The notes below the pieces were generated by a model. That model worked only from the letters and a program-made list of their open reading frames with translations. It did not search any database and was not told where the DNA came from. DNA of 64,000 nucleotides from Leucoraja ocellata (taxonomy: Eukaryota). Positions 3,891-43,289 of the stretch are shown in pieces. Position 1 is the first letter of the stretch, and each line of letters opens with the position of its first letter. The translations under genes and the position numbers were made by a program. The stretch covers positions 4,092,001-4,156,000 of the forward strand of contig JAWMAR010000203.1 of assembly GCA_036785375.1 (NCBI GenBank), read 5' to 3'.

Positions 3891-6800
3891 TTTCAAAATA
3901 GGTGCAGAGGAGGCTATTTGGCCCTTCGAGCCAGCACCGCCAACTATTGTGATCATGGCTGATCATCCTCAATCAATAACCTGTACCTGCCTCTCCCCAT
4001 CTCCCTTGACTCCACTAGCCCCTAGAGCTCTATCTAACTCTCTCTTAAATTCATCCAGTGACTTGGCCTCCACTGCCCTCTGTGGCAAGGAATTCCACAA
4101 ATTCACAACTCTCTGGGTGAAAACGTTTTTTCTCACCTCAATCTTAAATGCCGCCCCTTTATTCTAAGCACATTTGGAACTCTCAGAAGGCGATTAATGG
4201 CGAGTCACAAAGATCAATTGGTTTGGAGCTCAAGGAAAGTAATTGAATAGAGAAGTAAGTTTCGGAAGCCATGCCACATCCTCTAGATTCTGTTTTTTTA
4301 TATTTTGCATATGTTGTTTGAGAGATGAGTGTGTGGTTGTATGATAAGTATCAGTTTGCGGTTTTGTTGAAGAGGGACAATGTATTACTGTGGAGTAAGT
4401 TACCGGTTCTTCATAAATTATATTAATCTTTCTTTTAATATGTTTATTTTATTAGGAGCAATTGTACAAGAATAAAGCAATCGGCATGAGAGTTATACAA
4501 TTTCCGTACAGCTTCATTTTTAACATCTTATAAATTGATACATAAATCGAAAAGAATAAATTGATACATAAATCGAGGAAAAGAGAAAAACGAAAAGAAT
4601 GAAGAAAAAGAAGAAAGATGCAAAAAAGAGCGAATTGTTATCTTTGACCTTTAAGACGGCATATTCTGTTTCTTGGGATTGCTCGGTCCATCTCAATTCC
4701 TGTCTTTGCTGTCCCTCCTTGCAATAAACAGGTGCCTAATGCAGATTTTCATAGTTTATTGAAAGATTATCCTGCAACACAAAAATAACAAATAACAATA
4801 AGAACCACTTGCAAATATTAGTGTTATAGAGTTGATATCATAGTTATAGAGCACGGAAACAGACCCATCAGCCCAACTCGTCTACACCGACCAAGATGCC
4901 CCATCTAAGATATTCCCATTTGCCCGCGGTTGGCACTAGTCCCTCTAAACCTTGTGTCCATGTACCTGTCCAAATATCTTTTAAATGGTGTTGTAGTCCC
5001 TGCCCCAACTACGTCTTCCGGCGGCTCGTTCCATATACCCACATATACCCTGAATGATAAAGTTGCCCCTCAGGTTTTTCCCTCTCACATTAAACATATG
5101 CCTTCTATTTCTCAATTCCCTTTGGCTATAAAAACTCAGTGCATTCACCCACTTATTCCCATTATGATTTTATACACCTCCATAAGATCGCCCATTATCC
5201 TCCTGTGCTCCAGTGAGTCCAAGCCTGCTCAACCTCTCCCTCAAGTCCTGTCAACATCATCGTAAATCGTCTCTGTATACATTCCAACTTATGGTTAGAA
5301 AGATATTTTCTTCATTTTAGAATTGGAGAAGCGGAGGAATTTTAGAACTTTAGAACATTTTGGATAACAATAGAACGGAGATGAGAGGATTTATTTAGCC
5401 AGATGGTGGTGAATCTGTGGAATTCATTAGCACAGTCAGTGGTAGAGGCCAAGACATTGGATAATTTTAAAGCGGAGAATGATAGATTCTTGATTAGTAC
5501 GGATGTCAAAGATTACGGTGAGAAGGCAGGAGTATTGGTTGAGAGGGAAAATTAGATCAGCCATGAGTGTATGTCGGAGCAGACTCGATGGGCTGAATGA
5601 CCTAATTCTGCTACTATGTCTGATGATCTTATGGTCATTTTATTTTTAGCTGAATCTAATGAGGTATTCTGTTCCTGATTTATAATTTATAACTTATAAA
5701 TTATAATGAGGCACTGTTCCTGATTTATATTGAAAAGTCATGTGAAATCAGTAACGAATTTGATTAGCAAACACCAAATGGGCATAAGCTAAAGTGTGGG
5801 TGTGTGTGTGTCCATGGACTAGTCAGTGATCGATGGGCATGTGACACTTGTGGGCAATATCTGTTTCAATGATATCATTGTCAACATAACCCAGGAATGA
5901 AGCAGGTTACAAAGAGAGGTGGGCACTGCCTAGTCCATCACAGGAACAGACCGCCCCAACATCAAAGGGATCTGCAGGAGGCGCTGCCTCAAAAAGTCAA
6001 CCAATAACATCAGACCCACAGCACCCTGGCCATGCTTTCATTTCATTCCTGCCATCAGGAAGAAGGTACAGGAATGTGTGAACAGCAATGTCCAGGTTCA
6101 GGAACAGCTTCTTTCCACCAACCATCAGGCTCATGAACACTGCACAACATCAACTAAACTGTCTTTAGTTGCACTACACAATTTGTGGGTTTTTGCAATG
6201 GATTGCATTTTTGTTTGCTATATATTCTTTGTATGCCTTGTGTTTACAGGCTTGTTATGCTGCTGCAAATAAGAATGTTATTGTTCTGTTGTCAGTGTAT
6301 ATGACAACAAATGATAACACTCTTGTCCCTTAACAGGGTCAACCAACCTTCTCATCAGTTTCACCGTCGAGGAAACTTATCTATCCATATTCAGCAGAGA
6401 TACTGCCTGACCGTTGAGTCTTTGGGTCATTTTCTGATCTTAACAATGGCCAGTCCATTGCATTCAGTTTTCCCAACAACAAAGCTTGCTAGAATCAGAT
6501 AGACACAAACTCAACGAGACAGACAACGTCTATGTGGTGGACAGGTGACGTTTCAGATTGGGACTCTTCTTCAGACTGGGGGGGGGGGGGGCTGAAAGTA
6601 AGCAAAGACTGGGACAAATCAGGGCCGGCAACAAATGACCTCAGGCAGGTTGGTATTGATGGGATTGTTGTTGGCAGGGGACAGTGTGATATGACGGTGG
6701 AATATTGCTAGAATCAGAGAACTTTGCGCTGGCAATTCATATTTTACTGAAGTGACCTCCAACTGCAAAAACTCATCCGACCACTCACTGAGCTGTTTAA

Positions 6801-7988: not shown

Positions 7989-8099
7989 TCATTGCACGAG
8001 CAATGTCCAATGACTGGTATGCAGTTGACCACAAGGCCTCCTTGAAGAGGGAGTGTGTTTTGGAATATGGATCTCACTTTGTTGGCAGTATAATTCCAG
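7989..8099 (-). CDS. Exon 6: probable terminal cytoplasmic exon
   Basis: Strong polypyrimidine acceptor ttgtttgccgtttccttccatcag|. Phase-0 frame LELYCQQSEIHIPKHTPSSRRPCGQLHTSHWTLLVQ-TGA in unique sequence. ATTAAA on the minus strand at 7761-7766 is a possible polyA signal. Confidence 0.55.
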   Translation of the reverse strand: MELYCQQSEIHIPKHTPSSRRPCGQLHTSHWTLLVQ

Positions 8100-10373
8100 C
8101 TGATGGAAGGAAACGGCAAACAAGTTAAATGCATTGACAAATTATTTCGATTGAAAAAGTACAGCGACAATTCGGGTTTGCTGACACAAGGAACTGCAGA
8201 TGCACTAGACTTTAGAGAAACAGTGCGGAAACAGGCCCTTCGGCCCACCGAGTCCGTGCCGAACAGCGATTAACCCCTGCACTAGCACTATCCTACACAC
8301 TAGTGATAGTTTTTACAGAAGCCAATTTGAAGAATGAGAGGAAACAGGAGCACCCGGAGAAAACCCACGAATTAAGGGACAGAGGTTTAGGGGTAACATG
8401 AGGGGGAACTTCTTTACTCAGAGAGTGGTAGCGGTGTGGAATGAGCTTCAGTGGAAGTGGTGGAGGCAGGTGTAGGAGAGGTGGAGACAAGTGTAGGAGA
8501 GGTGTACTGACTGTGTGGGCAGACACTTTAGACGTGATTGCCCACCAGTCTCAAAAGCTGCTGTGTCTCCCTGTCCCTGGGATAGCAGGGGGCGATCAAA
8601 CAGCACAATACCCTCTCCCCCTCCAAGCCAACACGAAGGGCAACGATCCCAAGGCTTTAGCTTCAGGAACAGCTTCCATAACGCGAGAGAGATCATGCAC
8701 TGTTGTAGGTCTCCTTTGCACGTCGGTGTTTCTGTCTTTCTCCACTCATTGTTGGCCCTATCTGTCACCACCCCCACCTACACCCCTCTGCTTCCCGGCC
8801 ATGTGGTGTGACCCCTTCCCTCCCCTCTCCAGCTCCCCGCCCATTGCACATGCGTGGGGGCTTTGCACTGTCTTCACGTCGGCGATGCCAGCGGGTCAGT
8901 GCCAGTCGCCCCGGGGCAGTCGCTCCCTTCAGTTTCCCAGGGGGTCGAGATGGGACTGGAGTTGGGAGGGAAAGGTGGGTGGGTGGGGGGGGGGGATAGG
9001 TGGCCAGGAGAGTGGGGTTGTTTGCAGTTGCAGAGGGAGGGGGCAAGGGCGGTACAGTTCCGTCTCAGCTTCTACCCAGGGTGGTGGCCTGAGACGTCAG
9101 GGCCAATGGGACACCGACCCCCAGGCCCACCAGGCCCACTGCAAGCACGGAGAACCCAGAGACCCATAGCCAACAGCAACTCCAGCCCAGCCTCGCTCCC
9201 GATGGGCTGCTACGGCGACAAGTGGCAGTTCGCCCATAGCCCGAGCTGCGCCCCCTCATCCGCCACCCCAAGAACAAGACGTACCTTGCACACCATCAGC
9301 TTCTGACCCTACGGGGAGCGGGTTCCTCTGGAGTTGGAGCGAGGCTGGGCTGGAGTTGCTGTTGGCTGTGGGTCTCTGGGTTCTCCGTGCTTGCAGTGGG
9401 CCTGGTGGGCCTGGGGGTCGGTGTCTCGTTGGTCCTGACGTCTCCGGCCACCCCCCTGGGCAGGAGCTGAGACTGGGAACTGTACCGCCCTTGCCCCCTC
9501 CCTCTGCAACTGCAAACAACCCCACTCTCCTGCTCACCTAACCCCCCCACCCCCCCCACCTTTCCCTCCCAACTCCAGTCCTATCTCGACCCCCTGGGAA
9601 ACTGAAGGGAGCGACTGCCCCGGGGCGACTGGCAATGACCCGCTGGCATCGCCGACGTGAAGACAGTGCAAAGCCCCCACGCTGGTGCAATGGGCGGGGA
9701 GCTGGAGAGGGGAGGGAAGGGGTCACACACATGGCCGGGAAGCAGAGGGGTGTAGGTGGGGGTGGTGACAGATAGGGTCAACAATGAGTGGAGAAAGACA
9801 GAAACACCGACGTGCAAAGGACACCTACAACAGTGCATGATCTCTCTCGCGTTATGGCAGGTGATTGTCGCTGGGAAACTGAAGGGAGCGACAATCTGCT
9901 GCTGCCTGCCCGCTGAGTTAAAGCGTTCCCACGGTAGACTCACGATACACTAAGGTAAACGCACGGGCCACTACGTTCTTACAAGTTAAAATGTTTCAAT
10001 TCTTTTTTTTTAAATTTATTTATTTTTTTAATTTTATTTTTATTAGAAGTACGGTAAATTACAATACTACACAACACATATATCTTAATACATTTTTTGT
10101 ACCGCTTCATTTTTTTTGAGCTTTAAGAAAAAGATAGAAGTAAGGAAAGTAAAGAAAGTGCGCAAGAGTCGTGAAGTGCAAGAGTGTTGGGAAAAGAAAG
10201 CCCTTAGAAAAGAAGTTAGAGAAGGAAGTAAAGTGAGAAAATAGACCCTAGAAAAGAAAGAAAAAGAAAATAGGAACAATCGCTCTATTATAACATTAAA
10301 CTCCGCAGAAAGGGGACTACCAACCAAGTCTGTTTTTGTTGTTTTACCTCCCGTTACCAGGTCCTGATACCAT

Positions 10374-10417
<44 letters not shown>

Positions 10418-13400
10418 ATTACTATTGCACCTCATACTTGTAATAGGTCCAGAAAAATAGACCACGCCTTTTGGAATTGGTCTGCTTTACCTGCTAAGAG
10501 GAATCTCATCTCTTCCAGATGTAATGTTTCAAACATATTTGATATCCACATTTTTATTGTTGGTGTGGGCGCATTTTTCCAGAATTTAAGTATAAGCTTT
10601 TTTCCCATTATTAGCCCGTAATTAAATACATTCTTCTGAAACACGTTTAGTTCAGGGTTACCTTCCGATATTCCAAAGATAATCCATTCTGGTTTTGGTA
10701 CCAGTTTTATTTTGACTAATTTTGAAAATATATCAAATATTTCATACCAGAATTTTTGGATTTTTGTACAAAAAACAAAAGAGTGCGCTATGGTAGCTTC
10801 TTGACACAGGCATTTATCACAGATTGGTGAAACATTGGGGAAGATTTTATTTAATTTAGTTTTTGAATAATATAATCTATGTAATGTTTTAAATTGGATG
10901 AGCGTATGTCGTACGTTGTTTCAATTCTTAACCACAAGGGTAAAATTGACTCGTGGAAAATTTTAAACATGTTTGACTTTTTGCAAGAGTTGACAAGTTT
11001 CTCGAGTACCTGCCGTTAGCGCCACGAGTCTCTAAGTTACGTCTACGAGTTTGGTACGTTAATCGTGCGTTATTACATAGAAACATAGAAACATAGAAAT
11101 TAGGTGCAGGAGTAGGCCATTCGGCCCTTCGAGCCTGCACCGCCATTCAATATGATCATGGCTGATCATCCAACTCAGTATCCCGTACCTGCCTTCTCTC
11201 CATACCCCCTGATCCCCTTAGCCACAAGGGCCACATCTAACTCCCTCTTAAATATAGCCAATGAACTGGCCTCAACTACCCTCTGTGGCAGAGAGTTCCA
11301 GAGATTCACCACTCTCTGCGTGAAATTACCACGAGTTTTAACTCGGGGTACCTCTTGTGTTAACTCGTAACGTGCGACTCAGCTATGAGGCAGCAACACT
11401 CCCACTGCGCCACCGTGCCGCAGAATGTCTTGTGTTATAGAGACATAGAGAGAGATACAGTGTGGAAACAGGCCCTTTGGCCCAACTCGCCCACACCGGC
11501 CAACAATGTCCCAGCTGCACTAGTCCCACTTGCCTGCGCTTGGTCCATAACCCTCCAAACCCGCCCTATCCATTTACCTGTCGAACTGTTTCTTAAAAGA
11601 TGGGATAGAATCAACTACCTAATCTGGCAGCTTGTTCCATACATCCACCATCCTTTGTGTGTAAAAGATACCCCTCGGATTCCTATTAAATCTTTTCCCC
11701 TTCACCTTGAACCTATGTCCTCTGGTCCTCGATTCCCCTACTTTGGGCAAGAGCCTCTGTGCATCTGCCCGATCTATTCCTCTCATGATTATTTATACCT
11801 CTATAAGATCTCCCATCATCCTCCTGTGCTCCATGGAATAGAGACCCAGCCTACTCAATCTCTACCTATAGCTCACACCCTCTAGTCCTGGCAACATCCT
11901 CGTAAATATTTTCTGAAACCTTTCCAGCTTGACAATATCTTTCCTCTAACATAGTGCCCAAAACTGAACACAATATTCTAAATGCCGTCTAACCAACGTC
12001 TTATACAACTACAACATGACCTCCTAACTTCGATACTCAATACTTTGACTGATGAAGGCCAAAGTGCCAAAAGCCTTTTTGACCACCTTATTTACCTGCG
12101 ACTCGACCTTCAACGAACCATGGTCGAGTCCCAGGTAGATGCCTCTACTCTACAATATTACCCAGAGGCCTACCATTTACTGTGTAGGTAATGCCCTTGT
12201 TTGACATCCCAAAATACAACACACCTCACACTTCTCTGTATTAAATGCCATCAACCATTCCTCTGCCCACCTGGCCAATCCTGCTACAATATTTCACAAT
12301 CATCTTCACTATCTGCAAAACCACAAAGTCCATTACATCCAATAGTGCTGATGAATTTGTTCATATAAGCTGACAATACCACAGTGTACATTAGAACATC
12401 GTGCATGCAACATAAGGGTAAATATCAAACTAAATTACTCACCTCATTTACTGAGGTATTTCGGTTTCTCATGCTTTGAATATCAACAGTTGCGTCATGG
12501 ACAGATGATTCTATAAAAAATATCATGAATATTTAGTGTATTTCAGAGATACAGGACAGAAACAGGCCATTCAGCCCACCGCGTCTACGCCGACCATCGA
12601 TCACCTGTTCGGACTAGTTCTACATTATCCCATTTTCACATCCACTCCCTGCACACTAGGGGCAATTTACACAGGGTCAATTAACCTACAAACCCACACA
12701 TCTTTGGGATGTGGGAGAAAAACAAAGCACTCTGAGGAAATCCAAGTGGTCACAGGGAGAACATGCAAACTCTACACAAAGTCAGCACCCGTAGTCAGGA
12801 TTCAAGAGAGAGTTAGATTTATTTCTTAGGGCTAAAGGAATCAAGGGATATGGTGAAAAAGCAAGAACGGTGTACTGATTTTAGATGATCAGTCATGATC
12901 ACATTTAATGGTAGTGCTGGCTCGAAGGGCTGAATGGCCCATTCCTGCACCTATTGTCTATGTTTCTATGTTTCTAACCCGGATCTCTAGTGCTGTGAGG
13001 CAGCAGCTCTACAAGCTGTCACACTCATTTTGTTTAAATTATTTTAATCTCTCTGGGAACTAAAGACAATATTCACTTTTATATATTCAGTTTTTAGTTA
13101 AATTACAAAATAAAATGTACAATGTATACATTACCTTTTCCTTTCTTCAATTTATTGTGATAATGATACACAATCAAGACCCATATTGGTACTATTAGGA
13201 TCAGACTCAGTCGAATGAAATAATACTTGGAGGATCCTTGAAAATCACAATTGAAATATGAATCAAAATAATGCTACAATGAATAGCAAATATAATCATG
13301 ACTATTGCATGTTACATTACATTAAATAATTTAAATGCACTGTTACATGAAACATTAATCATGTATGTCGTTTAGTTTAATTTTGTTTAGAAACACAGAA

Positions 13401-16400
13401 TAGAACCTGGTGCTTCAACCCGCAGAGTCCACGCTGACTATCGATCATCCGTTTACACCAGTTCTATGTTATCACCCTTTCACATCCACTCTCTACACAC
13501 TAGAGGCAATGTACAGGGACCAATTGAACTACAAACCCTTATGTCTTTTGGACGTGCGAGGAAACCGGAGCACCCGGAGGAAACCCACGCGGTCACGGCT
13601 AAAACATGCAATCTCCGCACAGACAATTGAAACAGAAATATATTAAAATCTAATATTTCCGATATATTGCTCTTGTGAAATATGTCAATGGGATTTTTTT
13701 CTGCAGGAATTCCATGGTAAATATTACCAATATGTCTGCTAATATAGATATGTGTATGAAAGAACTGCAGATGTTGGTTTAAATCGAAGGCAAACACAAA
13801 CTGCTGGAGTAACTCAGCGGAACAGACAGCATCTCTGGAGAGAAGGAATGGGTGACGTTTCTGGTTGGGACTCTTCTTCAGACTGATGTCAGGGAAGTGG
13901 GCAGTACAGAGATAAAATGTAGTCAGAGACAGTAAGACTGGTAGGAGAACTGGGAAGAGGGAGGTGATGGAGAAAGAGGGAAAGCAAGGGCTACTTGAAG
14001 TTAGAGAAGACAATGTTACTATAGATACTCCTTGATTATCACTTAATATTCTATTCCTACAAATATCTATACTTAAAGAAATGAGACAGGCCTTTCAGAG
14101 GAGAAAACCAACATTATTCTATTCATAGATTAACATTCTTACTATTCACTAAATTTACTGTTACTGGGGTAAAGATTGGTTCCTTGTGTTGTAAATAACC
14201 GCAAGATAACGTGTAGTAAATGGGGTCAAGGAAAGAGTGTTCACGTCGCGGCCCTGTTTCCACCAATCTCCCACCATCACGCACAAGAAGCACAACAAGC
14301 ACAAGACAGACATCATTGTATGGCTGTGGCTGAACAATTTGTAATCTTGGGTGTGGACTCAATAGGTGTTGTAAATTACCGAGCTGTTTAGTGAGAAGTG
14401 AAACATTTCACAAACCACTAGGGTTTACATAGAAACATAGAAAATAGGTGCAGGAGTAGGCCATTTGGCCCTTCGAGCCTGCACCGCCATTCAATATGAT
14501 CATGGCTGATCATCCAACTAAGTATCCTGTACCTGCCTTCTCTCCATAGCCCCGATCCCTTTAGCCACAAGGGCCACATCTAACTCCCTCTTAAATATAG
14601 CCAATGAACTGGCCTCAACTACCTTCTGTGGCAGAGAATTCCAGAGATTCACCACTCTTTGTGTGAAAAATGTTTTTCTCATCTCGGTCCTAAAGGAGTT
14701 CCCCTTATCCTTAAACTGTGACCCCTTGTTCTGGACTTCCCCAACATCGGGAACAATCTTCCTGCATCTAGCCTGTCCAATCCCTTAAGAATTTTGTAAG
14801 CCAGCCAGGACTCACCAACGCTAGGCTGGCCGTCTTCGAGCTGTGGCGGCATTCGGGCGCTCCAGTGACTCGACGCTCCCGTGAGGGTGACCGGTGAGAT
14901 GCTCCGGTGGCAGTGGCACGACTAGACGCTCGGGGCTGAGATGGCGCTCCGGTGAGGGCGGCCCGGCGCACGGCTGGGACGGCGCTCCGATAGCTGAGGC
15001 GGCGTTCTGGCGGCGGTGACCTGAATCCGGGGCTCGGCCGCGGGCCAGTGGACGACATCATCGGGAACTCGCAGGTCACAGGCTGGTGCCTGTTTTCCGG
15101 AGCTCCCACGGCAACAGCTGCATCGCTGGGCTGGAGGGCGGCAGCTTCGACCACCCCGGGCCGCGGAGCGTGAACCGTCCCATTCACGGAGCTCGGTGAG
15201 CCGCGGGACTGACTTACCATCGCCCAGTGGGGTAACAACATATCGCCTCAGCGCAGAGGGAGAAGAGGAGGGAAGAGACAGTAACCCTAAGATTTTTGCC
15301 TCCATCACAGTGAGGAGGTGCCTGGTGAACTCACTGTGGTGGATGTTAATTTGTGTTTATTGTGTGTTTTGTTGTTTATTATTACATGTATGACTGCAGG
15401 TAACGACATTTCGTTCAGACCAAAAGGTCTGAATGACAAATAAAGGATCTAATCTAATCTAATCTAAAAATGTGTAAAGAGAAATAAAGTCAAAGAAACA
15501 GGTCAAGGACCGATCGTGAGAACAGGGAGCAAATTAGACGATAGAGATGAGCAGAATTTCATAGGAAGGAACTACAGATGCTGGTTCAAATCGAAGATAG
15601 ACAGAAAATGCTGAAGTAACTCAGTAGGACAGGCAGCATCTCTGGAGAGAAAGAATGGGTGACGTTTTGAGTCAAGACTTCTTCAGACAGAGGGTCAAGG
15701 GGAAGGGAAACAAGAGATATCGACAATGATGTCGAGAGATATAGAACAACTGAATGAAAGATATGCAAAAAAGTATTGATGATAAAGGAAACAGGTCATT
15801 GTTAGCTGTAGTTAGGTGAGAACAAAAAGCTGTTGTGACTTGGATGGGGAGGGATGGAGAGAGAGAGGGAATTCAAGGGTTACTTGAAGTTAGACAAATC
15901 AATATTCATACCCCTGGGTTGTAAGCTGCCCAAGTGTAATATGAGATGTTGTTCCTCCAATTTCCTTTTTTTTTAAATAGATTTTTTATTAGAGGCATCT
16001 GCATATCATAATCCAAACCAGTACAGACTTTGTTTAACGGTTACATATTAAATATCCAGGTTTCCAGGGAGCCAGTTACCAAAGTAGCTGGGATCCTCCT
16101 TTATCGGTTACATGTTAACATTGCCTCTAATTATTTATTTATATTTATATATAGGAAAAAGAAAGAAAGAAAGAAGGAATAGATAAAAATAGGATAAACT
16201 ATCAATAATACAACTTGGTGCCAGAGAACATAACTATTCATCTAGTCCTGGGTTCAGGCTTCAGTCCAGCCTCCGCACTAGTCCGATCTACCCCTTCATA
16301 AATCTATAAATGGAGACCATATTCTAGTAAATAATTCTGGTTTGTCAATTAAGACAAATCTAATTTTTTCCAAATGTAAGGTCTCCGACATCTCCATAAT

Positions 16401-19400
16401 CCACATCTTGATTGTGGGGGTTGTTGGGTTTTTCCAAAATTTTAATATCAAATTTTTCCTAATTATTATACTGTAATCAAGGAAATCTCTTTGGTTTATT
16501 GTGAGGTTTAGGGATTGTTCTGATATTCCCAATATTATTAATTTAGGATCGGGATCGATTTGGATATTGACAACTACAGAGATTATTTAAAAAATATCCA
16601 TCCAGTAATTTTTAATTTTACTACAGTTTACAAAAGTATGGGTTAAATCAGCCACGTGGGATTGACATTTATCACAGATAGGAGAGATATTAGGAAACAT
16701 TCTATTTAATTTTGTTTTAGAATAATGCAGTCTATGTAGTGCTTTAAATTGTATTAAAGAATGTATGGCATTTAACGAACATTGGTGTATATGTTGTAGG
16801 CTTTTGTCCCAAATATCTTTCATTATAGGTTGAGCTAATTCCGTTTCCCATGCTGGTCTGTATAATTCCATCGACGGATTCTCACTGTCTATAAAAGTAT
16901 TATAAATGTGAGATATTAATTTGACTGTGTTAGGGTGTTTATTCAAACATTCATCTCAAATCTCTGGCTCTCTGGTTCTGTATTCTCGTGTCTGCGATTT
17001 AACATAATCTTTAAGTTGTAAATATCTAAAAGATTTATTTGAATGTAATCCGCAATTCTGTTGTAACTCCTGAAACGAGAGAAAAATACAATTTCTATAA
17101 AGATGTCCCATCGTTTTATTTCCATGATTTTTCCATTGTACAAAACCTTTATCCAACACTGAGTGTTTAAATAAAGGATTATTTGCAATGGGGAGAGAAA
17201 GTGATAAATTATCCAATTTTAATGTCTTTTTTAGTTCTTTCCAAATTCGAATACCACTATATATTATAGGGTTTTCACTATAGATTTTTTAATTCAATTT
17301 TGTAGGAGCTAATAGAATCGGACCAATTTCAAAAGGCAAACAGTCTTCCTTTTCCATCTTTAACCAGTCTGGTTGTTGATCCATATCTTCCAACCAAAAA
17401 TTCATATTTTTGACATTGACTGCCCAAAAGTAAAATAAAAAATTTGGTAAAACTAATCCTCCTTTGGTCTTCGATTTGCATAAGTGTTTTTTGCTTATTC
17501 TATGGTTCTTATAATTCCAAATAAAACTTGTCACTATAGAGTCAACTTTATAAAATAAATATTTTGGGAGATTTATAGGAATTGATTGTAAAAGGTATAG
17601 CAATTGCGGAAGGAAAATAATTTTTATAGCATTAAATCTACTGAGCATTGAAATGAGAAGTGTTTTCCAATATTGAATATTATTATGCAATTTATTAAGT
17701 AAAGGCATGAAATTTGATTTAAATAAAGAAGTATATTTCATGGTCACATAAATTCCTAGGTATTTACATTTTTCCTTGACTATTCTGAAAGGTGATTGTT
17801 GCAATATGTATAACTTGGCATAATCTCACTTTTATTCCAATTAATTCTATATCCCGAAAATAAACCAAATTGAGTTACAAGATTTAACAAGTTTGGAATG
17901 CTGATTTCTGGGTTTGCAATATATAGTAATACATCGTCTGCATATAGAGAGATTTTATTAACTGTATTTTTAGTATTATACCCATATATTTCTGGATGTG
18001 TTCGAACACTTTCTGCTAGTGGTTCAATAGCAAGGGCGAATAATAATGGAGATAACGGGCATCCTTGTCTGAAACCTTTAGATAAATATAATTTTGTTGA
18101 TAACATTTGATTTGTCATTATTCTAGCTGTTGGGTTAGTGTATAAAAGCTTAACCCATGTGCAAAACATCTCACCCAGTTGAAATGTTTCCATCACCGAG
18201 AATAAATAGGGCCATTCCTCCAATTTCCATTTAACCTCACTTTGATAATGGAGGAGGCCTAGAACAGAAAGGTTAGGGCGGGAATGAGAAGGAGAATTAA
18301 ATGTGTTTAGCAACTGGGAGATCAGGTAGGGCCAGGCGGACTGAGAGAAGGTGTTCAGCGAAATGATGGCCCAGTCTACATTTGGTCTCGCCGATATATA
18401 AGAGTCCACACCTTGAACAATGGATACAGTAGGTGAGGTTGGAGGAGATGCAAGTGAACCTCTGCCTAACCTGAAAGGACTACCGGGATCCCGGGACGGA
18501 GTCGAGGGAGATGGTATAGGGACAGGTGTTGCATCTCTTGTGGTTGCAGGGGAATTTTTTCCAGGGTGATATTCCTGCGGGGAAAGTGGCAATAATTTCA
18601 AAAGTAAATAAAAATCAGAAGATAGACACAAAGTGCTGTAGTAACTCAGCGGTTCAGTCAGCATCTCTAAAGAAAATAAATACTGTAGGTGACGTTTCGG
18701 GTCGCAACCCTTTTTCAGACAGATAGACAGATAGAGAATGTAGGAACGAAATGCAGATGCTGGTTTATACCAAAGATAGACCAATGAAAACAAGTAAACT
18801 ACTCTAAAGTAGAACTTATAACAATACAGGAACAGATCCTTCAGCCCTGAATGTCCATGAAGAACATGATGCCAAGTTAAACTAATCTCTGTTTGCATAT
18901 CATCCATATCCCTCCATTCCCTGCAAATCCATGTGCCTATCAAAACCTCTAACCTCTAACACCACAAATCGCATCTGCCTCCCCCACCACCCCTGGCAGC
19001 ATGATCCAGCTCACACCACCCTCAATAAAAATTTTAAATGCTCATAAGATCATGCGGCATTTGTGAAGAGAAAATCAGATTCAACGATTCAGGTCAAAAC
19101 CTGTGTCAGTATTTTTAACTTTTTTGTTTTAATTTAGTTTAGATTATTGTTACATGGACTGAGATACAGCAAAAAGCTTTCGTTTTCTCATCAAAATATA
19201 CAATTTTGCTTTTTTCCCCCCACATTATGCTAGACTTCACATCTATTTTCTTGTTCATATATTCTATTCACAATCAACGTTCCTATCTGTCTTTGTATCA
19301 TTCAAAAATTCAGCAACATCACAACGCTGCCTTCATAGGAGTCGTATACATTACAATATTTCATAATATAATATTCAGTCTGAAGAAGGGTCCTGACCCG

Positions 19401-22400
19401 AAACATCACCTATCCATGTTCTCCAGAGATGCTGCCTGACCCGCTGAGTTACTCCAGCAATTTTCCCACCGTTCCACCATATTCCACTGTCCTTGTAAGG
19501 AAACCAAGTTGATTTAACAGCAACACTATAACCGGTGGGGCACCGGGAGTGACATTGAAGTGTAAATAATTAAGTATTGTGTATAGTTTATGGAGATACA
19601 AGGAAGGACAGATGCTGGAATCGTGAGCAAAACACAACGTTGTGGAGGTACTCAGTGGGTCAGGCAGCATCTGTGGAAGGAAAGGACAGACGATGTTTGG
19701 ATCGGGAACCTTCGTCAGTCTGAAACATCGTCTGGTTATTCCCTCCACAGATGCTGCTTGACCAGCTGCGTTTGTTTATAGTTTATATATTCAGCCTCAC
19801 CAGCTGAGTTCCTCCAGCATTTATTTTGCCTACCCAGTGTATGAGGTGATCGCTGATCGGCCGAAATGCCTTTTTTCCGCGTATGTCTAAAGTCTAAATA
19901 CATATTTGCAATAGATATTGCACACATTGAGCGATCTTATACACTTTTGATCAGGTTTATGAATTACGTTCAACGTTCTCCAGAGATGCTACTAGACGCT
20001 ACTGAGTCACTTCAGCACTTTGTGTCTTTTTTCAAATCTAGAATCTGCAGTTCATTGTGGCTACGTTTAACAAATGTGTACACATGTACTATTAAACCTT
20101 GCAACCTTGGACATGTGTAGGAAGGAACTGCAGATGCTAGTTTACAGCGCAGATAGACACAAAATGTTGGAGTAACTCGGCAGTAACTGAGCCGCTGAGT
20201 TACTCCAGCACTCTGTGTATATTCAGTAATTGGAGGACGTTTGCTGCCACGTTCATTCAAGCCACTTACTTGGGATGGGAAGGAAACGTTTGCTCACCGT
20301 CCCCGTGAGGTGCTGAACCAGGCATGTGACGACCATGCCCGCCTCTAGCCGAGGGCCGGTGAGCCGCAGCCGGGAGCTCACATTGAAGCTTCCATCCTCA
20401 TTCTCCCTCAGCGGCCCCGCTTCTGTTTCATAGGACAACTGGCCCACGACAGCCCAGGACATGTTCAGCTCCCTCGGGAAGAATCCGGCGGCCACACAAG
20501 TCAGGCTTCGCGTCTCTGCGCCTTTTACCCCGGGATCCAGGGTCAGGGAGATGTCAGGCTTCGCTGCGTAAAGTAGAAAAATAACACGCTGTGAATCTTC
20601 CTGTCGCTCTCAGTCATGCATGGAGCAACTATGATAACACGGCACGCCGTGCACCTGCTTAAGGAGCAACCAAGTTATTCAATGGATTATTAGCGGAATA
20701 AAGAGGAGCTGCAAACGCTGGTTTATACCAAAGAAAGGCACAAGTACTGGAGTAACTCAAATGGTCAGTCGGCATCTCTGGAGAACATGGATAGCTGACG
20801 AGACACAAAGTGCTGGAGTAACTCTTCATGGATGATATGTGATGTTTCGGGTCGGGTTACATCTACAGATTACATCTCTTCAGTCTGTGTCTCAAAATGC
20901 ACAATAAGAGAGAAAAATACAGGAAGCGAATGAAATGGAAGTGGAGACAAGGAATTGGAGATGCTGGAATATTTAAGAATAAGGAGTAAGCCATTTAGAA
21001 CGGAGATGAGGAAACACATTTCTCCCAGAGAGTTGTGAATCTGTGGAATTCTCTGCCTCAGAAGGCGGTGGAGGCCAATTCTCTGGATGCTTTCAAGAGA
21101 GAGTTATAGAGCTCTTAAAGATAGCGGAGTCCCTGGATATGGGGAGAAGGCAGGAACGGGATACTGACTGTGGATGATCAGCCATAATCACAGTGAATCA
21201 GCGGGCGAAATGGACAGGCGGTGTTTCGGGTCGGGACCATCCTTCGGTCTGAATCGCCGCCTGTCCATTCAGATGCTGCCGGACCCGCCGAGTTCCTCCA
21301 GCACTTTGTGTGTTTTAATGCATGAAATGGAAGTGAATATGTAGACGGTAAACTAAATCCAAGCAGATGATGGACATCTAAAACAGAACAGATAAATATT
21401 CAGCCGGACAGGCCTGATTCGTGGGAAGAGAATGACGGCCCAGGTTCTCCAGAGATGCTGCCTGACTCGATGAGTTACTCCAGCACTTTGCGTCTTTGTT
21501 TCAACCAACCCCTTCAGTTCCTTGTGTCTCAGGGTCAGGGTTTCGGCTGGAAGCCTTCAGTGTGAATCGGTAAATTATCCCCCCCACCCCACACACACAC
21601 GCACACAGATACGGGCCGACCCGATGAGTAGCTCCAGCATGTTGTGTTACATCTGGTACTGTCCGGCCCAGATTGGTCAGAAGATGGATTCACGTTGCCA
21701 GAATTATTTAACATAGTCTGGTCGGGTCGGGCTCCCTCTCGCCAGCCCGTGGGCGACGGGAGAGCGGCCGCACGTTTGCATTGTAGCTGCCTCCCTTCAA
21801 TGAAGCGTTAGGGATGTGTGCGACCATCCCCACTGTCCGCTGATACAGTGGGGCTGGGGACCTCACACACGTCCCAAGTTCCCCAACACCAAACCTCCAC
21901 GAATGCTGCCTTAACCGCCGAGTTCCCCGTTACTTTGTGTTTTGCTTCAGACTCCAGCGCCTGCAGTTCCCCGTCTCCACTTCTATTTATTTCCCTTCCT
22001 GCATTTTATCTCTCTCTATTAATGTGCACGTTGAGGCACAAACCAACCCAGGCTGACGAAGGGTCCTGACCCTAAACGTCACCTCTCCCTGATGTCCAGA
22101 GATGCTGCCTGACCCGCTGTTACTCCATCACTTGGAGTATGCCCTCTCTCACTGCTGCCCTCCTTGATTCTATCGCTTATATTTAGTTGTGTTCATTTCC
22201 ACACATATACATGATGCATCTGCAGTTATCGCAGCCGGGAATTATTTCAGGGGCATTATTATACTTCCCTGGAGCCCGGAAGCAAATATTAAACCGAACT
22301 TGACAAAGACAAGAATCAATAGACAATAGACAATAGGTGCAGGAGTAGGCCATTTGGCCCTTCGAGCCAGCACTGCCATTCAATGTGATCATGGCTGATC

Positions 22401-24950
22401 ATCCCCAATCAGTACCCCGTTCCTGCCTTCTCCCCATATCCCCTGACTCCGTTATTTTTAAGAGCCCTACATAGCTCTCTCTTGAAAGCTTCCAGAGAAC
22501 CGGCCTCCACAGCCGTCTGAGGCAAATAATTCCACACACTCACCACTCTCTGTGAGAAAAAGTGTTTCCGCGTCTCCGTTCTCAATGGCTTACTCCTTAT
22601 TCTTAAACTGTGGCCCCTGGTTCTGGACTACCCCAACATCGGGAACATGTTTCCTGCCTTTAGCGTGTCCAAGCCCTTAACAATCTTATATGTTTCAATA
22701 AGATATCCTCTCATTCTTCTAAATTCCAGAGTGTACAAGCCCAGCTGCTCCATTCTCTCAGCATATGACAGTCGCGCCATCCCGGGAATTAACCTTGTAA
22801 ACCTACGCTGCACTCCCTCAATAGCAATCCTTCCTCAAATTAGGGGACCAAAACTGCATACAATACTCCAGATGTGGTCTCACTAGGACTCTGTACAACT
22901 GCAGAAATACCCTTTTGCTCCTATATTCGATTCCTCTTGTTACAAAGGCCAACAATCGCTTTCTTCACTGCCTGCTGTACCCGCATGCTTACTTTCATAG
23001 ACTGATGAACAAGGACCCCCAGATCCCGTTGTACTTCCCCTTTTCCCAACTTGACGACTTCAGGTCAAGAGGGAATCTAGAGAAAACTGAGAGAAACAAA
23101 GATGCTTTTGTTTCCACACTCCCTCCTTGTAAGGAAATCAAGAGAATTAAATGCCAGCACTAGACATGTTGGGAATATAAACACTGCGACCGAGGTTGAT
23201 GTTGTTTTCCTTATCTATTTTGTATCATTAGGGAGACGGGAGGAACTGTAGATGCGAGTTTTTTTTAGACTCAAAGCGCTGGAGTAACTCAGCGGGTCAG
23301 GCAGCATCTCTGGAAATCATGGATATATGACGTTTAAGTTCGGGACCTTTTGTCAGACTGGGCTGGTTTGTGCCGGAAAATGAGCATTAATAGAGAGAGA
23401 TGAAATGCAGGAATGAAATGGAAGTAGAGACATGGAACTGCAGGCGCTGCAGTCTTAAGCAAAACACAAACTGCTGGAGGAACTCAGCGGTTAAGGCCGC
23501 ATCTGTGGAGAGAATGGACAGGCGGTGTTTCGGTTTGGGGAACTTGGGATTCGTGCGATTCACCAACTCCATCGCATCAGATCTCGGGGTGGCTGTGGAG
23601 GCAGATTCGATCGTAGAGTTTAAGAGACTTTTGGATAGACACATGTTTGTTTAACTTGGCCTCATGGGCCGCACGAACATTGTGGGCTGAAGGGCCCGTT
23701 CCTGTTGTATGTTCTATATTAATTACCTTGGATATGTAATGTGGTTCCGTTTCCTGTAAACCTTTTCCAGGGGGATGTATCACGAATCAGTACCACACAA
23801 TGGTAAATGTCTGCATCGTGCACAGTCACCTCCCGAATGACCAGCGAGCCCACAGACACGGACAGTCGGTCGCCTGTCTTCAGAAAACTCTCGGTCTTGG
23901 TGTCCCTGAGCTCCGGGTTGTCTTTCGTCCGAAACCAGTATTGCCTCATTGAAACTACCTCCCCCTCTTCAGGTAGCAGGGAGCAGGTGAACGTAGCTGT
24001 CTGCCCTCGGAGACGTGTCAGAGCAGCAGGAGACTGGTTCACCCTCACACCGACAGCAGACCCTGGCACGGAAAGTGAACATAGTTAACGACGTCTTCCG
24101 AGTAACTCGAGTTTACTATCATGGGCACAAGGACAGTGAGGTCCAGGCCCAATTACCCCCCCCCCCCCCCCTCTCTCTCACCTGTAACCACTTGTGTTGG
24201 AAGGAACTGCAGATGCTGATCTATATCGAAGACAGACACAAAGTGCTGGAGAAACTCAGCGGCGCTGGCAGAATCTCTGGCGAACATATCTGAAGAAAGG
24301 TCGCGACGCGAAACGTCATCTGTCCATGTTCTCCAGAGATGCTGCCTGACCCGCTGAGTTACTCCAGTACTGTGTTTTGTTCAAGATTCCAGCATCTGCA
24401 CTTCTTGTGTCTCTTACATTTATTTGCGTTAATGTCCTCATGTAAACTTACATTAACTGCATTTCCAGCATCTACAGTTCCATGTGTCGCTTATGTTTAA
24501 GATAGACACAAGGTACAGGAGTAACTCAGCGGGTCAGGCAGCATCTCTGGAGAAAAATGACGGGTGACGTTTCGGTTCGGAACCATTCCACAAATTCACA
24601 ACTCTCTGGGTGAAAAAGTTTTTTTCTCACCTCAGTCTTAAATGGTCTCCCCTTTATTCTTATTGTAACTACATGTTCAATTTCTGCTTTTGTGTCTAAA
24701 TTAAAAACTTGCTTGCAACAGCAACACATGCACCTACACTGAAACAAACACATATTCAAAAACAAATTGAACATAAATTACACAAGAAGTTTCTAAAAGA
24801 CCGCAAAAAAACAACAAACATTAATGCAAAAGCCATAGAAAGAAACATGTTATAGGAAGACAACGTGAACAGGTTGGCAAGGGTGAACATGAATGACTTA
24901 CCTGGGAGAAAGAGGCAGAGTGTGGAGATGAATTGTGTAAACGATGACAT
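7989..24950 (-). CDS. Six-exon IgSF receptor gene: leader - VJ-type V - C1 - TM(Arg) - cytoplasmic tail, 319 aa; NKp30/NCR3-like V domain, non-rearranging antigen-receptor-like architecture
   Basis: Exons 24950-24902, 24062-23727, 20563-20270, 13236-13135, 12510-12443 and 8099-7989 sum to 960 nt. All introns are GT-AG with phases 1,1,1,1,0, giving an open frame: MSSFTQFISTLCLFLPGSAVGVRVNQSP...TATFTC...YWFR...HDADIYHC...FTGNGTTLHIQAKPDISL...LTCVAAGFFPRELNMSW...ENEDGSFNVSSRL...VTCLVQH...RSSKYYFIRLSLILIVPIWVLIVYHYHNKLKKGKESSVHDATVDIQSMRNRNTSVNELELYCQQ...WTLLVQ*. Confidence 0.85.
8490..9955. mobile_element. Rearranged internal portion of the TIR element family seen at 59728-61372, containing an inverted duplication of about 500 bp
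   Basis: 8490-8620 is the reverse complement of about 60780-60905. Segments 8678-9190 and 9340-9855 are inverted copies of one another. Confidence 0.75.
10005..10916 (-). mobile_element. L1-clade LINE 3' fragment with A-rich tail and 13-bp TSD
   Basis: TSD TGTTTCAATTCTT at 9992-10004 and 10917-10929. T-rich run at the left end. ORF2 C-terminus KKLILKFWK...MWI...LHLE and a CxxC zinc knuckle. Confidence 0.85.
11076..11325 (-). mobile_element. CR1 3' end fragment (same family also at about 14428-14800 and 45161-47629)
   Basis: (CATAGAAA)n tail plus conserved 3'UTR and end of ORF2. Confidence 0.85.
11440..12330 (-). mobile_element. Degenerate CR1 3' portion (second family)
   Basis: Decayed CR1 ORF2 C-terminal sequence with a GGAAACAGGCCC-type 3'UTR. 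Confidence 0.7.
12443..12510 (-). CDS. Exon 5: cytoplasmic
   Basis: Acceptor gatattttttatag|, donor GAG|gtgagt, 68 nt, phase 1-0, open frame ESSVHDATVDIQSMRNRNTSVNE. Confidence 0.75.
13135..13236 (-). CDS. Exon 4: transmembrane exon with Arg near the outer membrane face
   Basis: Acceptor tgtgattttcaag|, donor AAAG|gtaatg, 102 nt, phase 1-1, in unique non-repeat sequence. Encodes RSSKYYFIRLSLILIVPIWVLIVYHYHNKLKKGK: hydrophobic span then basic stop-transfer. Confidence 0.85.
14800..15466 (+). mobile_element. Non-autonomous retroelement with GC-rich body, 3' stem-loop and short-repeat tail (relative at about 56245-56650)
   Basis: Shared 3' region ending TTCAGACC(A/G)AAAGGTCTGAATGACAAATAAA, followed by (TCTAA)n or (TTCAA)n. 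Confidence 0.65.
15560..18560 (-). mobile_element. Penelope-like element remnant (GIY-YIG endonuclease end plus terminal repeat), split by the L1
   Basis: About 18460-18300 translates TCISSNLTYCIHCSRCGLLYIGETKCRLGHHFAEH. The frame resumes past the L1 as LEEQHLILHLGSLQPRGMNIDLSNFK*, followed by the repeat carrying a CTGAAGA...AAAACGTC core. Confidence 0.85.
15966..18214 (-). mobile_element. L1-clade LINE, 5'-truncated, with polyA and 14-bp TSD, inserted in a Penelope element
   Basis: RT motifs GFRQGCPLSPLLFALAIEPLA and SLYADDVLLY, GGLVLPNF, and zinc knuckle CDKC...HTFVNC. TSD TTCCTCCAATTTCC at 15952-15965 and 18215-18228. Confidence 0.92.
19380..19458 (+). repeat. Penelope-derived dispersed repeat with hammerhead-ribozyme-like core (representative copy of many)
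   Basis: CTGAAGA-A-GGGTC-CT-GACCC-GAAAC followed by CTCCAGAGATGCTGCCTGACCCGCTGAGTTACTCCAGC. Other copies at 1553, 22053, 24290 (+) and about 6550, 7660, 13855, 15661, 18691, 54818, 63866 (-). Confidence 0.75.
20270..20563 (-). CDS. Exon 3: C1-set Ig domain
   Basis: Acceptor ttttctactttacgcag|, donor CCAA|gtaagt, 294 nt, phase 1-1. Motifs LTCxAxGFFP-x-L-x-x-SW, NEDGSFNVSSRL and TCxVxH are C1-set hallmarks. Confidence 0.93.
22316..23055 (-). mobile_element. CR1 3' fragment in the V-C1 intron
   Basis: (CAATAGA)n tail and QRRFTRLIPGM...LGLYTLEFRRMRG. Confidence 0.85.
23727..24062 (-). CDS. Exon 2: V-set Ig domain with germline-encoded J-like G strand
   Basis: Acceptor cactttccgtgccag|, donor CAAG|gtaatt, 336 nt, phase 1-1. 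Has B-strand Cys (TFTC), C-strand Trp (YWFR), DxxxYxC (DADIYHC) and the GxGT diglycine bulge (FTGNGTTLHI). Confidence 0.95.
24902..24950 (-). CDS. Exon 1 (signal peptide) of the VJ-C1 receptor
   Basis: ATG in context caaaATGt encodes MSSFTQFISTLCLFLP, then CCAG|gtaagt, a consensus phase-1 donor. Typical Ig-type leader exon 839 bp upstream of the V exon. Confidence 0.85.
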
Positions 24951-28059: not shown

Positions 28060-28238
28060 NNNNNNNNNNNNNNNNNNNNNNNNNNNNNNNNNNNNNNNNN
28101 NNNNNNNNNNNNNNNNNNNNNNNNNNNNNNNNNNNNNNNNNNNNNNNNNNNNNNNNNNNNNNNNNNNNNNNNNNNNNNNNNNNNNNNNNNNNNNNNNNNN
28201 NNNNNNNNNNNNNNNNNNNNNNNNNNNNNNNNNNNNNN
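28060..28238. other. Assembly gap
   Basis: Run of N. Confidence 1.
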
Positions 28239-43235: not shown

Positions 43236-43289
43236 TAAATTAACTTAAATAACTCGACACTTGCCGGGCCGCGCCTGCGCAGTTGGGTG

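What the first reader, a model, noticed from the sequence alone, without database searches (positions are those of the whole stretch)
7989..24950. Intact non-rearranging VJ-C1-TM(Arg) receptor gene hidden among repeats: an antigen-receptor-like chain that needs no V(D)J recombination
Seen in sequence: six GT-AG, phase-consistent exons give an uninterrupted 319-aa type I membrane protein. The V exon carries its own J-like GxGT strand (FTGNGTTLHI) and I see no heptamer/nonamer pair around it. It splices to one C1-set domain. Established: a V(J)+C1 pair is the layout of Ig light chains and TCR chains, and C1 domains are largely confined to jawed-vertebrate adaptive-immunity proteins plus a few relatives (tapasin, SIRP, B7-H6). 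Germline VJ-C1 genes are regarded as candidate relatives of the gene invaded by the RAG transposon. Inference: this is a cartilaginous-fish innate receptor retaining that pre-rearrangement architecture. Only parts of two of its exons are evident in the ORF track.
Basis: partly seen in the sequence, partly recalled or inferred. Interest (0 to 1): 0.9.

Follow-up and report, generated by a model that had tools for sequence, protein, structure and literature searches.

The report
Ray SIRP-like V-C1 receptor, ITIM lost
This is a real, non-rearranging immune-receptor gene (one antibody-like V domain with a built-in J strand, one C1 domain, one membrane anchor) of a family found across sharks and rays, and this copy appears to have lost its inhibitory tail and gained a charged membrane residue.

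Summary
On the minus strand they are leader, V(J), C1, TM and a 68-nt cytoplasmic exon. All have AG/GT borders and consistent phases. Pfam gives V-set 4.6e-9 and C1-set 5e-13. No RSS flanks the V exon.

The gene is not an orphan. It belongs to a V(J)-C1-TM family with predicted proteins in 13 named elasmobranch species. NCBI auto-names them SIRP-beta-1-like, SIRP-alpha-like, Ig kappa-like or TCR-beta-like. The best match is sawfish, with 65% identity in V.

Most relatives carry ITIM-type tails. A TAG sits exactly at the first ITIM tyrosine, and the sequence behind it has decayed. The TM Arg replaces a Leu kept in 10 of 10 relatives.

The alternative model gives 294 aa.

My reading is a SIRP-like paired-receptor member converted from inhibitory to non-inhibitory, possibly activating. 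No RNA evidence could be obtained. Unchecked scan notes report further VJ-C1 genes elsewhere in this genome.

The parts
24902..24950 (-). Exon 1: start codon and signal peptide (MSSFTQFISTLCLFLP + 1 nt), ends in phase 1
   Evidence: Aligns to the leaders of relatives (..LWLFLPGPAV..).
23727..24062 (-). Exon 2: V-set domain with built-in J-like G strand (FTGNGTTLHIQ), phase 1 to 1
   Evidence: Pfam V-set 4.6e-9. 65% identical to the Pristis protein. Keeps Cys, Trp, DxxxYxC and GxGT. No RSS next to it.
20270..20563 (-). Exon 3: C1-set domain (..LTCVAAGFFPRELNMSW..VVTCLVQH..), phase 1 to 1
   Evidence: Pfam C1-set 5e-13. 62% identical to Pristis. tblastn E 3e-34.
13135..13236 (-). Exon 4: short stalk, transmembrane helix with Arg (YYFIRLSLILIVPIWVLIVYHY) and basic stop-transfer stretch, phase 1 to 1
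   Evidence: Hydrophobicity scan. tblastn to relatives' TM exon at E 1e-4, 48%. The Arg column is Leu in 10 of 10 relatives with this TM type.
12443..12510 (-). Exon 5: 68-nt cytoplasmic exon (ESSVHDATVDIQSMRNRNTSVNE), phase 1 to 0
   Evidence: Weak but collinear match to EPSVHDKNVDNQITRKRIKDSVNK of relatives (54% of 24 aa, E 0.07-1.7). Its 3' border coincides with the point where Pristis isoforms X1 and X2 diverge.
4736..4771 (-). Homology-supported last coding exon: DNLSINYENLH then TAG (4738-4736) at the position of the first ITIM tyrosine
   Evidence: Strong phase-0 acceptor TTGTTATTTTTGTGTTGCAG|. tblastn of relatives' tails reaches E 1e-11 (P0060), 4e-10 and 3e-9. Relatives read L(Q/H)YA(S/P)V here.
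4622..4735 (-). Relic of the inhibitory tail behind the stop, same frame: ..TEYAVLKVKDNNSLFF (second tyrosine motif still readable)
4440..4621 (-). AT-rich insertion or duplication that splits the tail relic and shifts its frame. Holds AATAAA at 4453 and 4448.
   Evidence: Both flanks match the same KVKDKNNLFY segment of relatives.
4314..4439 (-). Second piece of the tail relic, in another frame: IIYEEPVTYSTV..TTHSSLKQ (third motif readable; fourth has His for Tyr)
   Evidence: tblastn E 1e-8 (P0057), 7e-8 (P0060), 1e-7 (P0058). Frame offset.
7989..8099 (-).
   Evidence: Good acceptor and an open frame to TGA. Unique in the window. No match to any relative. No RNA data.

Best explanation
The locus encodes a type I membrane receptor of an elasmobranch-wide family of non-rearranging V(J)-C1 receptors. 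The family resembles SIRPs in layout and signalling logic.

Shown:
- The ectodomain is one V domain with a germline-fused J strand plus one C1 domain.
- Most relatives carry a tail with up to four ITIM/ITSM-type tyrosine motifs.
- Some rays also have near-identical partner genes with a different Arg-bearing TM and a short tail, so the family is a paired inhibitory/activating system.
- The window's copy descends from the inhibitory type. It uses that type's TM exon, juxtamembrane exon and tail exon.
- Two changes remodel its signalling end. A Leu-to-Arg change sits in the outer third of the TM helix. A TAG sits exactly at the first ITIM tyrosine, behind which the old tail has picked up a frame-shifting insertion and a Tyr-to-His change.

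Inferred:
- The Arg lets it pair with an Asp-bearing ITAM adaptor (DAP12, FcR-gamma or CD3-zeta type), making it an activating counterpart.
For: - Exon anatomy and phases.
- Domains.
- Family: HMMER over 1.84 billion representatives found 52 proteins at E<=1e-3. The top five full-V matches are V-C1-TM proteins of rays and sharks (sequences; names). each listed 16 proteins, all elasmobranch except one caecilian.
- All five exons and the tail relic align collinearly to these proteins.
- ITIM-type motifs in relatives, and Arg-TM partners in Pristis, Mobula hypostoma and Hemitrygon.
- Arg column is Leu in 10 of 10 relatives.
- Stop at the ITIM tyrosine and decay behind it.
- 849 nt of exons 1-5 are free of stops or frameshifts, and 40 of 48 family-invariant columns are kept, including the Cys pairs, Trp and GxGT.
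- The C1 tree places the gene inside the ray clade with 99/99 support.
- Unchecked scan notes report an ITIM-bearing VJ-C1 gene 125 kb away on the same piece.
Against: - No expression or splicing evidence.
- The stop and the Arg each rest on one base of one assembly.
- The V domain changes 6 of 26 otherwise invariant columns, while no relative changes more than 2 of 22. The TM exon is only 42-52% identical to relatives, which are 58-76% identical to Pristis. Both facts fit relaxed constraint as well as functional change.
- The second motif TEYAVLKVKD behind the stop is still perfectly conserved. The stop may therefore be recent, or an isoform may still read that stretch.
- Adaptor pairing is pure inference.
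- Pristis also makes an ITIM-less isoform without any TM charge (P0001), so a short tail alone does not mean activation.
Confidence: 0.6

Rival explanations
1. It is an inhibitory receptor gene in early decay, an unprocessed pseudogene in the making. The stop in the tail came first, and the TM and V changes reflect relaxed constraint. The Arg has no function.
For: - Premature stop, and a decayed tail with a frame-shifting insertion.
- Excess of changes at otherwise invariant V columns: 6 of 26 against at most 2 of 22.
- The TM exon is the most diverged coding part.
- No RNA holder found.
Against: - Exons 1-5 (849 nt) have no stop, frameshift or broken splice site, whereas the roughly 450-nt relic behind the stop has an insertion, a frame shift and a lost tyrosine.
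- All fold-defining residues are kept.
- C1 changes only 2 of 20 invariant columns, no more than Narcine or Mobula.
- The TM stretch is still a clean 22-residue helix followed by basic residues.
Confidence: 0.22
2. It is a signalling-silent or decoy family member like SIRP-gamma. It binds ligand, has a short tail and no adaptor, and the Arg merely snorkels at the membrane edge.
For: - The Arg lies only five residues into the helix.
- Pristis produces an ITIM-less isoform without a TM charge.
- Rays that have dedicated activating partners use a different TM exon, and the window lacks that exon.
Against: A Leu conserved in 10 of 10 relatives was replaced by the one kind of residue that typifies adaptor-coupled receptors. 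Functionally nothing was tested.
Confidence: 0.13
3. One reading: it is a surviving representative of the pre-RAG antigen-receptor gene, retaining the primordial VJ-C1-TM(Arg) design.
For: - V(J)+C1 layout without RSS.
- V is most like IgNAR V, Ig light-chain V and TCR V in the PDB.
- A family profile scores UrIg2 highest in the PDB at 7.5e-37.
Against: - The Arg and short tail are derived in this copy.
- The same layout is already known for SIRPs and UrIg.
- The C1 domain is equally close to IgG CH3 (30.5 bits), SIRP-alpha d3 (28.0) and UrIg2 C3 (27.5), so no special nearness is shown.
- The PDB is dominated by antibodies, which biases top V hits.
Confidence: 0.05

Closest known systems
SIRP family (SIRP-alpha inhibitory, SIRP-beta activating through DAP12, SIRP-gamma silent)
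   Same: - N-terminal V domain with a J-like strand followed by C1-set domain(s).
- Type I membrane protein.
- Relatives carry four tyrosine motifs in the tail.
- Paired forms with a charged TM residue and a short tail.
- NCBI's pipeline names 9 of the listed relatives SIRP-beta-1-like or SIRP-alpha-like.
- A family profile hits SIRP-alpha at 3.2e-33 across V plus d2 in one stretch.
- The published idea that V-C1 links SIRP to antigen-receptor origins (PMC2785349, passages read).
   Different: - One C1 domain instead of two. The two in Hypanus and Mobula are near-identical recent duplicates.
- The V exon does not retrieve SIRP V among 40 PDB hits at E<=0.01.
- C1 is no closer to SIRP than to IgG CH3 or UrIg2.
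- Arg rather than Lys in the TM. That SIRP-beta has Lys is recalled, not from a call.
- Orthology, CD47 binding and synteny were not tested.
UrIg and UrIg2 (non-rearranging elasmobranch VJ-C1 genes; Flajnik et al. 2023, 2025)
   Same: - Elasmobranch, germline-joined VJ exon followed by C1-type domains.
- UrIg2 is the top PDB hit of the C1 exon by summed score (7.4e-19) and of the family profile.
   Different: - UrIg2 has nine C domains and forms antibody-like homodimers (PMC12227049, passages read). This gene has one C1 and an immunoreceptor-type TM and tail.
- The UrIg2 V is not among the V exon's PDB hits.
NKp30 / NCR3
   Same: VJ-type V domain, a TM arginine and a short tail. NKp30 V chains appear among the V exon's PDB hits (E 7e-4 to 1.6e-3). 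A B7/butyrophilin-type gene lies next door.
   Different: NKp30 has no C domain. Its similarity is weaker than that of IgNAR V (22-23 against 30 bits). That the NKp30 TM holds Arg is recalled, not from a call.
Activating receptors derived from inhibitory ones (KIR, Ly49, PIR and other paired families)
   Same: The same evolutionary route: a charged residue appears in the TM and a stop removes the ITIMs, leaving a recognisable ITIM relic in the 3' region. This general pattern is recalled from the literature, not from a call.
   Different: A different protein family. Here the conversion happened in place, within a family that in other rays already owns a separate Arg-TM exon type.
[quoted passage not shown] 2019)
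   Same: Non-rearranging VJ-type IgSF receptors, cited together with NKp30 and SIRP as joined-VJ genes (PMC11599192 and PMC10751288, passages read).
   Different: The paper is not held and no sequence was on hand, so nothing could be compared. The MBE text contrasts 'VJ genes (NKp30, PRARP)' with the 'VJ-C1' gene UrIg, which suggests PRARPs lack C1. That is my inference.

Membership tests
Elasmobranch V(J)-C1-TM receptor family (NCBI models named SIRP-beta-1-like, PTPNS1-like and others) | Leader plus V exon homologous along its whole length, with the GxGT J strand | tested here: met
   E 1.1e-30 and 65% identity to Pristis in a library of 1.84 billion. Alignment.
Elasmobranch V(J)-C1-TM receptor family (NCBI models named SIRP-beta-1-like, PTPNS1-like and others) | Single C1 exon of the family type, placed within the family tree | tested here: met
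   62% identity to Pristis. Inside the ray clade with 99/99 support in the C1 tree of 17 rows. The V tree of 16 rows is unresolved at the base; one short row was dropped.
Elasmobranch V(J)-C1-TM receptor family (NCBI models named SIRP-beta-1-like, PTPNS1-like and others) | YYF-type TM exon and juxtamembrane exon | tested here: met
   tblastn E 1e-4 (TM). Exon 5 is weak but collinear.
Elasmobranch V(J)-C1-TM receptor family (NCBI models named SIRP-beta-1-like, PTPNS1-like and others) | Translated ITIM/ITSM tail | tested here: not met
   TAG at the first ITIM tyrosine. The rest is present only as a decayed relic.
SIRP (mammalian sense) | V domain followed by two C1 domains | tested here: not met
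   One C1 exon. No second V or C1 anywhere in the window.
SIRP (mammalian sense) | Specific sequence kinship of V and C1 with SIRP domains | tested here: inconclusive
   Single-domain scores for C1 are SIRP-alpha d3 28.0, IgG4 CH3 30.5 and UrIg2 C3 27.5 bits. No SIRP V among the V hits. The profile hits SIRP-alpha at 3.2e-33.
SIRP (mammalian sense) | CD47 binding; SHP-1/2 or DAP12 coupling; conserved synteny | not testable with these tools
   No functional data. The window holds no informative flanking host gene except a butyrophilin-like one.
Rearranging antigen-receptor genes (IgL, TCR, IgNAR) | V and J split by RSS-flanked DNA | tested here: not met
   V and J lie in one open exon. No RSS at its 3' end.
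Rearranging antigen-receptor genes (IgL, TCR, IgNAR) | V-set plus C1-set chain layout | tested here: met
NKp30 / NCR3 | Single V domain directly followed by stalk and TM, with no C domain | tested here: not met
   A C1 exon lies between V and TM.
UrIg / UrIg2 | VJ followed by three or more C domains, antibody-like | tested here: not met
   One C1. UrIg2 architecture from PMC12227049 (passages read).
PRARP | Sequence kinship with the chicken PRARP genes | not testable with these tools
   Paper not held, no sequence available. Searches found only citations.

The most novel reading that the evidence does not exclude
This family would be a third lineage of non-rearranging VJ-C1 genes in cartilaginous fish, beside UrIg and UrIg2. 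Its V domain would be a nearer relative of rearranging V domains (IgNAR V, IgL, TCR-alpha) than of SIRP V, mounted on a paired inhibitory/activating immunoreceptor chassis. On this reading an antigen-receptor-like chain works as a germline-encoded innate receptor. It has expanded into many genes in this genome, and the window's copy was caught converting from inhibitory to activating in place.
Probability: 0.15. Interest if true: 0.8.

Novelty: new member of a known kind. Interest (0 to 1): 0.48.

Why it matters
Germline-joined V(J)-C1 genes are the architecture expected of the gene that the RAG transposon split. Each well-documented lineage in cartilaginous fish helps to polarise that history.

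This locus shows that rays and sharks carry a conserved family of this kind that signals like SIRPs. In the literature I could search it is not described. I found only automatic names that disagree with one another: SIRP, Ig kappa, TCR beta, Ig heavy chain.

The window's copy also gives a clean, datable example of how an activating receptor can arise from an inhibitory one. It took one TM substitution and one nonsense codon at the ITIM tyrosine, and the dead tail is still readable.

The matter is of moderate, not high, weight. The layout and its evolutionary meaning are already published for SIRP and UrIg, and nothing here shows expression or function.

Tried and rejected
- TM candidates at about 14337-14160 were rejected. 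In the phase required by exon 3 one acceptor runs into a stop, the other frame has no family match, and neither aligns to relatives.
- The search for homologous proteins with the V exon alone gave nothing. Its length filter, 0.55-1.75 times 111 aa, excludes the full-length relatives, so this blank means nothing.
- The profile search scored only the 8000 candidates sharing the most words and returned family members only. It says nothing about more distant kin.
- I searched the window for the rays' alternative Arg-bearing TM exon (DxYLIPxIxR.. type). There was no match better than E 0.2.
- I searched for a second V or C1 in the window and found none.
The DNA local score was 23 against shuffles of 20 +/- 2.7 (max 34). 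blastp gave E 0.05 in a 14-protein database, with three gaps.
- P0003, the third-best HMMER hit, is an unrelated I-set repeat protein.
- Pfam DUF4578 matches the tails of two relatives below its cut-off (25.6 and 22.4 against 27 bits). No paper mentions it, so I left it.
- Literature searches found no description of an elasmobranch SIRP-like V-C1 family. The library lacks most subscription papers. PMC3709836, PMC4594805 and PMC10530332 are not held. Fu et al. 2019 and Ohta et al. 2019 were seen only as citations.
- Supplements are closed and I did not open any. The gene lists in the supplements of PMC10751288 and PMC12227049 may well name this family or place it on the MHC or antigen-receptor chromosomes.
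- Structure prediction and genomic context of relatives could not be done.

Full report
WHAT IS THERE

The gene lies on the minus strand. Reading the sequence and checking borders and lengths by script gives five exons with canonical AG/GT borders and consistent phases.
- Leader, 24950-24902, 49 nt. ATG with A at -3.
- V(J), 24062-23727, 336 nt.
- C1, 20563-20270, 294 nt.
- TM, 13236-13135, 102 nt.
- Cytoplasmic exon, 12510-12443, 68 nt.

Together they hold 849 nt, or 283 codons, without a stop. The first four junctions are phase 1, as is usual for IgSF genes, and exon 5 ends in phase 0.

Pfam calls exon 2 V-set (4.6e-9, 36.9 bits, cut-off 26) and exon 3 C1-set (5e-13, 49.6 bits, cut-off 21). 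The V exon runs without interruption into FTGNGTTLHIQ, a GxGT J-type strand.

An RSS scan of the whole window found 13 weak heptamer-nonamer pairs against 6.05 expected. None sits at the 3' end of the V exon on its strand.

That exon has a good acceptor and is unique in the window. No relative matches it. It remains a possible alternative terminal exon, nothing more.

THE FAMILY

A HMMER search of the V exon against 1.84 billion representative proteins gave 52 hits at E<=1e-3 and 10 at E<=1e-10. The best full-length V matches are 290-436-aa proteins of rays and sharks built as V(J)-C1(-C1)-TM-tail.

Two further searches, seeded with the closest relative and with a family profile, each listed 16 proteins.

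Together the family is predicted in 13 named species:
- Pristis pectinata, Mobula birostris, Mobula hypostoma, Hypanus sabinus, Hemitrygon akajei, Narcine bancroftii
- Heptranchias perlo, Hemiscyllium ocellatum, Stegostoma tigrinum, Scyliorhinus canicula, Mustelus asterias, Heterodontus francisci, Cetorhinus maximus

There is also one unlabelled entry and a distant caecilian protein.

The names are automatic and inconsistent: SIRP-beta-1-like, SIRP-alpha-like (PTPNS1-like), Ig kappa light chain-like, TCR beta chain-like, Ig heavy chain Mem5-like, and uncharacterized. No protein of the window's own species appeared.

Identity of the window's exons to the sawfish protein is 65% for V, 62% for C1, 48% for TM and 55% for exon 5. 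A C1 tree puts the window inside the ray clade with 99/99 support. The V tree is unresolved. By inference the genome is a batoid not in the list, perhaps a skate.

THE SIGNALLING END

Most relatives end in a tail with L(Q/H)YASV, TEYAVLKV, V(H/D)YSTV and T(I/T)YASLK, which are ITIM/ITSM-type motifs.

Three rays also have genes with almost the same ectodomain but a different TM with an Arg (..LIPFILRAVIITVG..) and a short tail. In Pristis the two ectodomains are 99% identical. The family is therefore a paired inhibitory/activating system.

The window lacks that alternative TM exon. It uses the inhibitory-type TM exon, but a Leu present in 10 of 10 relatives is Arg (CGA) here.

- A strong phase-0 acceptor at 4772/4771 is followed by DNLSINYENLH and then TAG, exactly where relatives have the first ITIM tyrosine.
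- Behind the stop, ..TEYAVLKVKDNN continues in frame (E down to 1e-11).
- A stretch of about 180 nt, AT-rich and flanked by a duplicated segment, follows and shifts the frame.
- After it comes IIYEEPVTYSTV..TTHSSLKQ (E down to 1e-8), with His in place of the last tyrosine.

The exon 5/6 border coincides with the point where the two Pristis isoforms diverge. With this last exon the product is 294 aa. AATAAA signals lie at 4453 and 4448. Whichever last exon is used, the protein has no ITIM.

INTACT OR DECAYING?

For function:
- Exons 1-5 have no defect.
- 40 of 48 family-invariant columns are kept, including both Cys pairs, Trp, DxxxYxC and GxGT.
- C1 changes 2 of 20 otherwise invariant columns, like Narcine and Mobula.
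- The relic behind the stop has clearly decayed more than the coding part.

Against:
- V changes 6 of 26 otherwise invariant columns, where no relative exceeds 2 of 22.
- The TM exon is unusually diverged.
- The perfectly kept TEYAVLKVKD behind the stop suggests that the stop is young.
- No RNA run holds the V exon. The three holders come from one study, are of unrecorded kind and are probably the assembly's own DNA.

WHAT IT IS LIKE

The V exon's best PDB matches are shark IgNAR V domains (30.4 bits, E 3.3e-6), then NKp30 (about 22-23 bits), Ig light chains, CD276 and TCR chains. No SIRP V is among the 40 hits. The sawfish V gives the same order. The catshark V puts Ig light chains first. The PDB's excess of antibodies biases this ranking.

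The C1 exon scores about equally against IgG4 CH3 (30.5 bits), IgA-entry CH3 (28.7), SIRP-alpha d3 (28.0) and UrIg2 C3 (27.5). UrIg2 leads only by the sum over three domains.

A family profile scores UrIg2 at 7.5e-37 and SIRP-alpha at 3.2e-33, with V plus d2 in one stretch.

So the family works like SIRPs, but orthology with SIRP is not shown.

The evolutionary meaning of V-C1 receptors is in print:
- for SIRP-alpha (PMC2785349, passages read);
- for UrIg/UrIg2 (PMC12227049, abstract and passages);
- PMC10751288 (passages read) states that several VJ-C1-type genes are known in tetrapods.

Five literature searches found no paper on this elasmobranch family. Key papers and all supplements were out of reach.

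SURROUNDINGS

Upstream on the same strand lies a butyrophilin-type IgC exon, within ORF 63182-63604 (Pfam C2-set_3 1.1e-14; BTNL8 9.8e-12). The rest of the window is transposon-rich.

Unchecked notes of this scan report other VJ-C1 receptor genes on the same piece 125, 506 and 620 kb before the window. One is said to have an ITIM plus ITSM tail. The notes also report clusters on other pieces. These are leads, not evidence. If true, they make this gene one member of an expanded family and give it a candidate inhibitory partner.

VERDICT

This is a real gene, correctly recognised in its first five exons. It is a new member of a known kind: a SIRP-like, non-rearranging V(J)-C1 paired receptor.

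Its particular interest is the in-place loss of the ITIM tail and the gain of a TM Arg. Its claimed status as a hidden pre-RAG relic is not supported beyond what already holds for SIRP and UrIg.

Noticed in passing
window 63182-63604 (minus strand): A butyrophilin-type IgC exon (Pfam C2-set_3 1.1e-14; best PDB match BTNL8 at 9.8e-12) lies upstream of the receptor gene on the same strand. Scan notes place its V exon just beyond the window's end. It may be a ligand-type neighbour or a hint of an MHC-like region.
   Followed up: partly
proteins P0054 (Pristis), P0063 (Mobula hypostoma), P0065 (Hemitrygon): Rays have partner genes with the same V-C1 (99% identical to the inhibitory gene in Pristis) but a different TM exon holding an Arg and a short tail. 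The family therefore already owns a dedicated activating form that the window's gene does not use.
   Followed up: partly
proteins P0055/P0002 (Hypanus) and P0057 (Mobula birostris): These relatives have two near-identical C1 domains in tandem (V-C1-C1), a recent exon duplication that recreates the SIRP-like three-domain layout. Ray tails have also lost the third and fourth tyrosines (VHNFTV, TTSFSL).
   Followed up: no
window 8441-9943, and again 59994-60879: GC-rich element (57% GC in 8001-10000) whose two halves give nearly the same long ORF peptides on opposite strands (for example ..RHRPPGPPGPLQARRTQRP..). This is a long inverted repeat inside intron 5, with a related copy near 60 kb.
   Followed up: no
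window 16296-18943 (minus), 45609-47618 (minus), 359-1186 (minus), 36715-37695 (plus), 48258-49814 (plus): Transposon ORFs. Reverse-transcriptase-like ORFs sit in intron 3 and elsewhere (387, 669 and 275 aa). There is also a 326-aa ORF that looks like a PIF1/Helitron-type helicase and a 518-aa ORF of unknown type. None was checked against a family library.
   Followed up: no
window 41175-43243 (plus): Long proline/serine-rich low-complexity ORFs (up to 344 aa) in a strongly C-skewed stretch (GC skew -0.40 at 40001-42000).
   Followed up: no
window 28060-28238 and 50560-50759: Two runs of N (179 and 200 bases). I left them as they are.
   Followed up: no
proteins P0059 and P0058, cytoplasmic tails: Sub-threshold Pfam matches of the ITIM tails to DUF4578 (25.6 and 22.4 bits; cut-off 27). 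No paper in the library mentions that family.
   Followed up: partly
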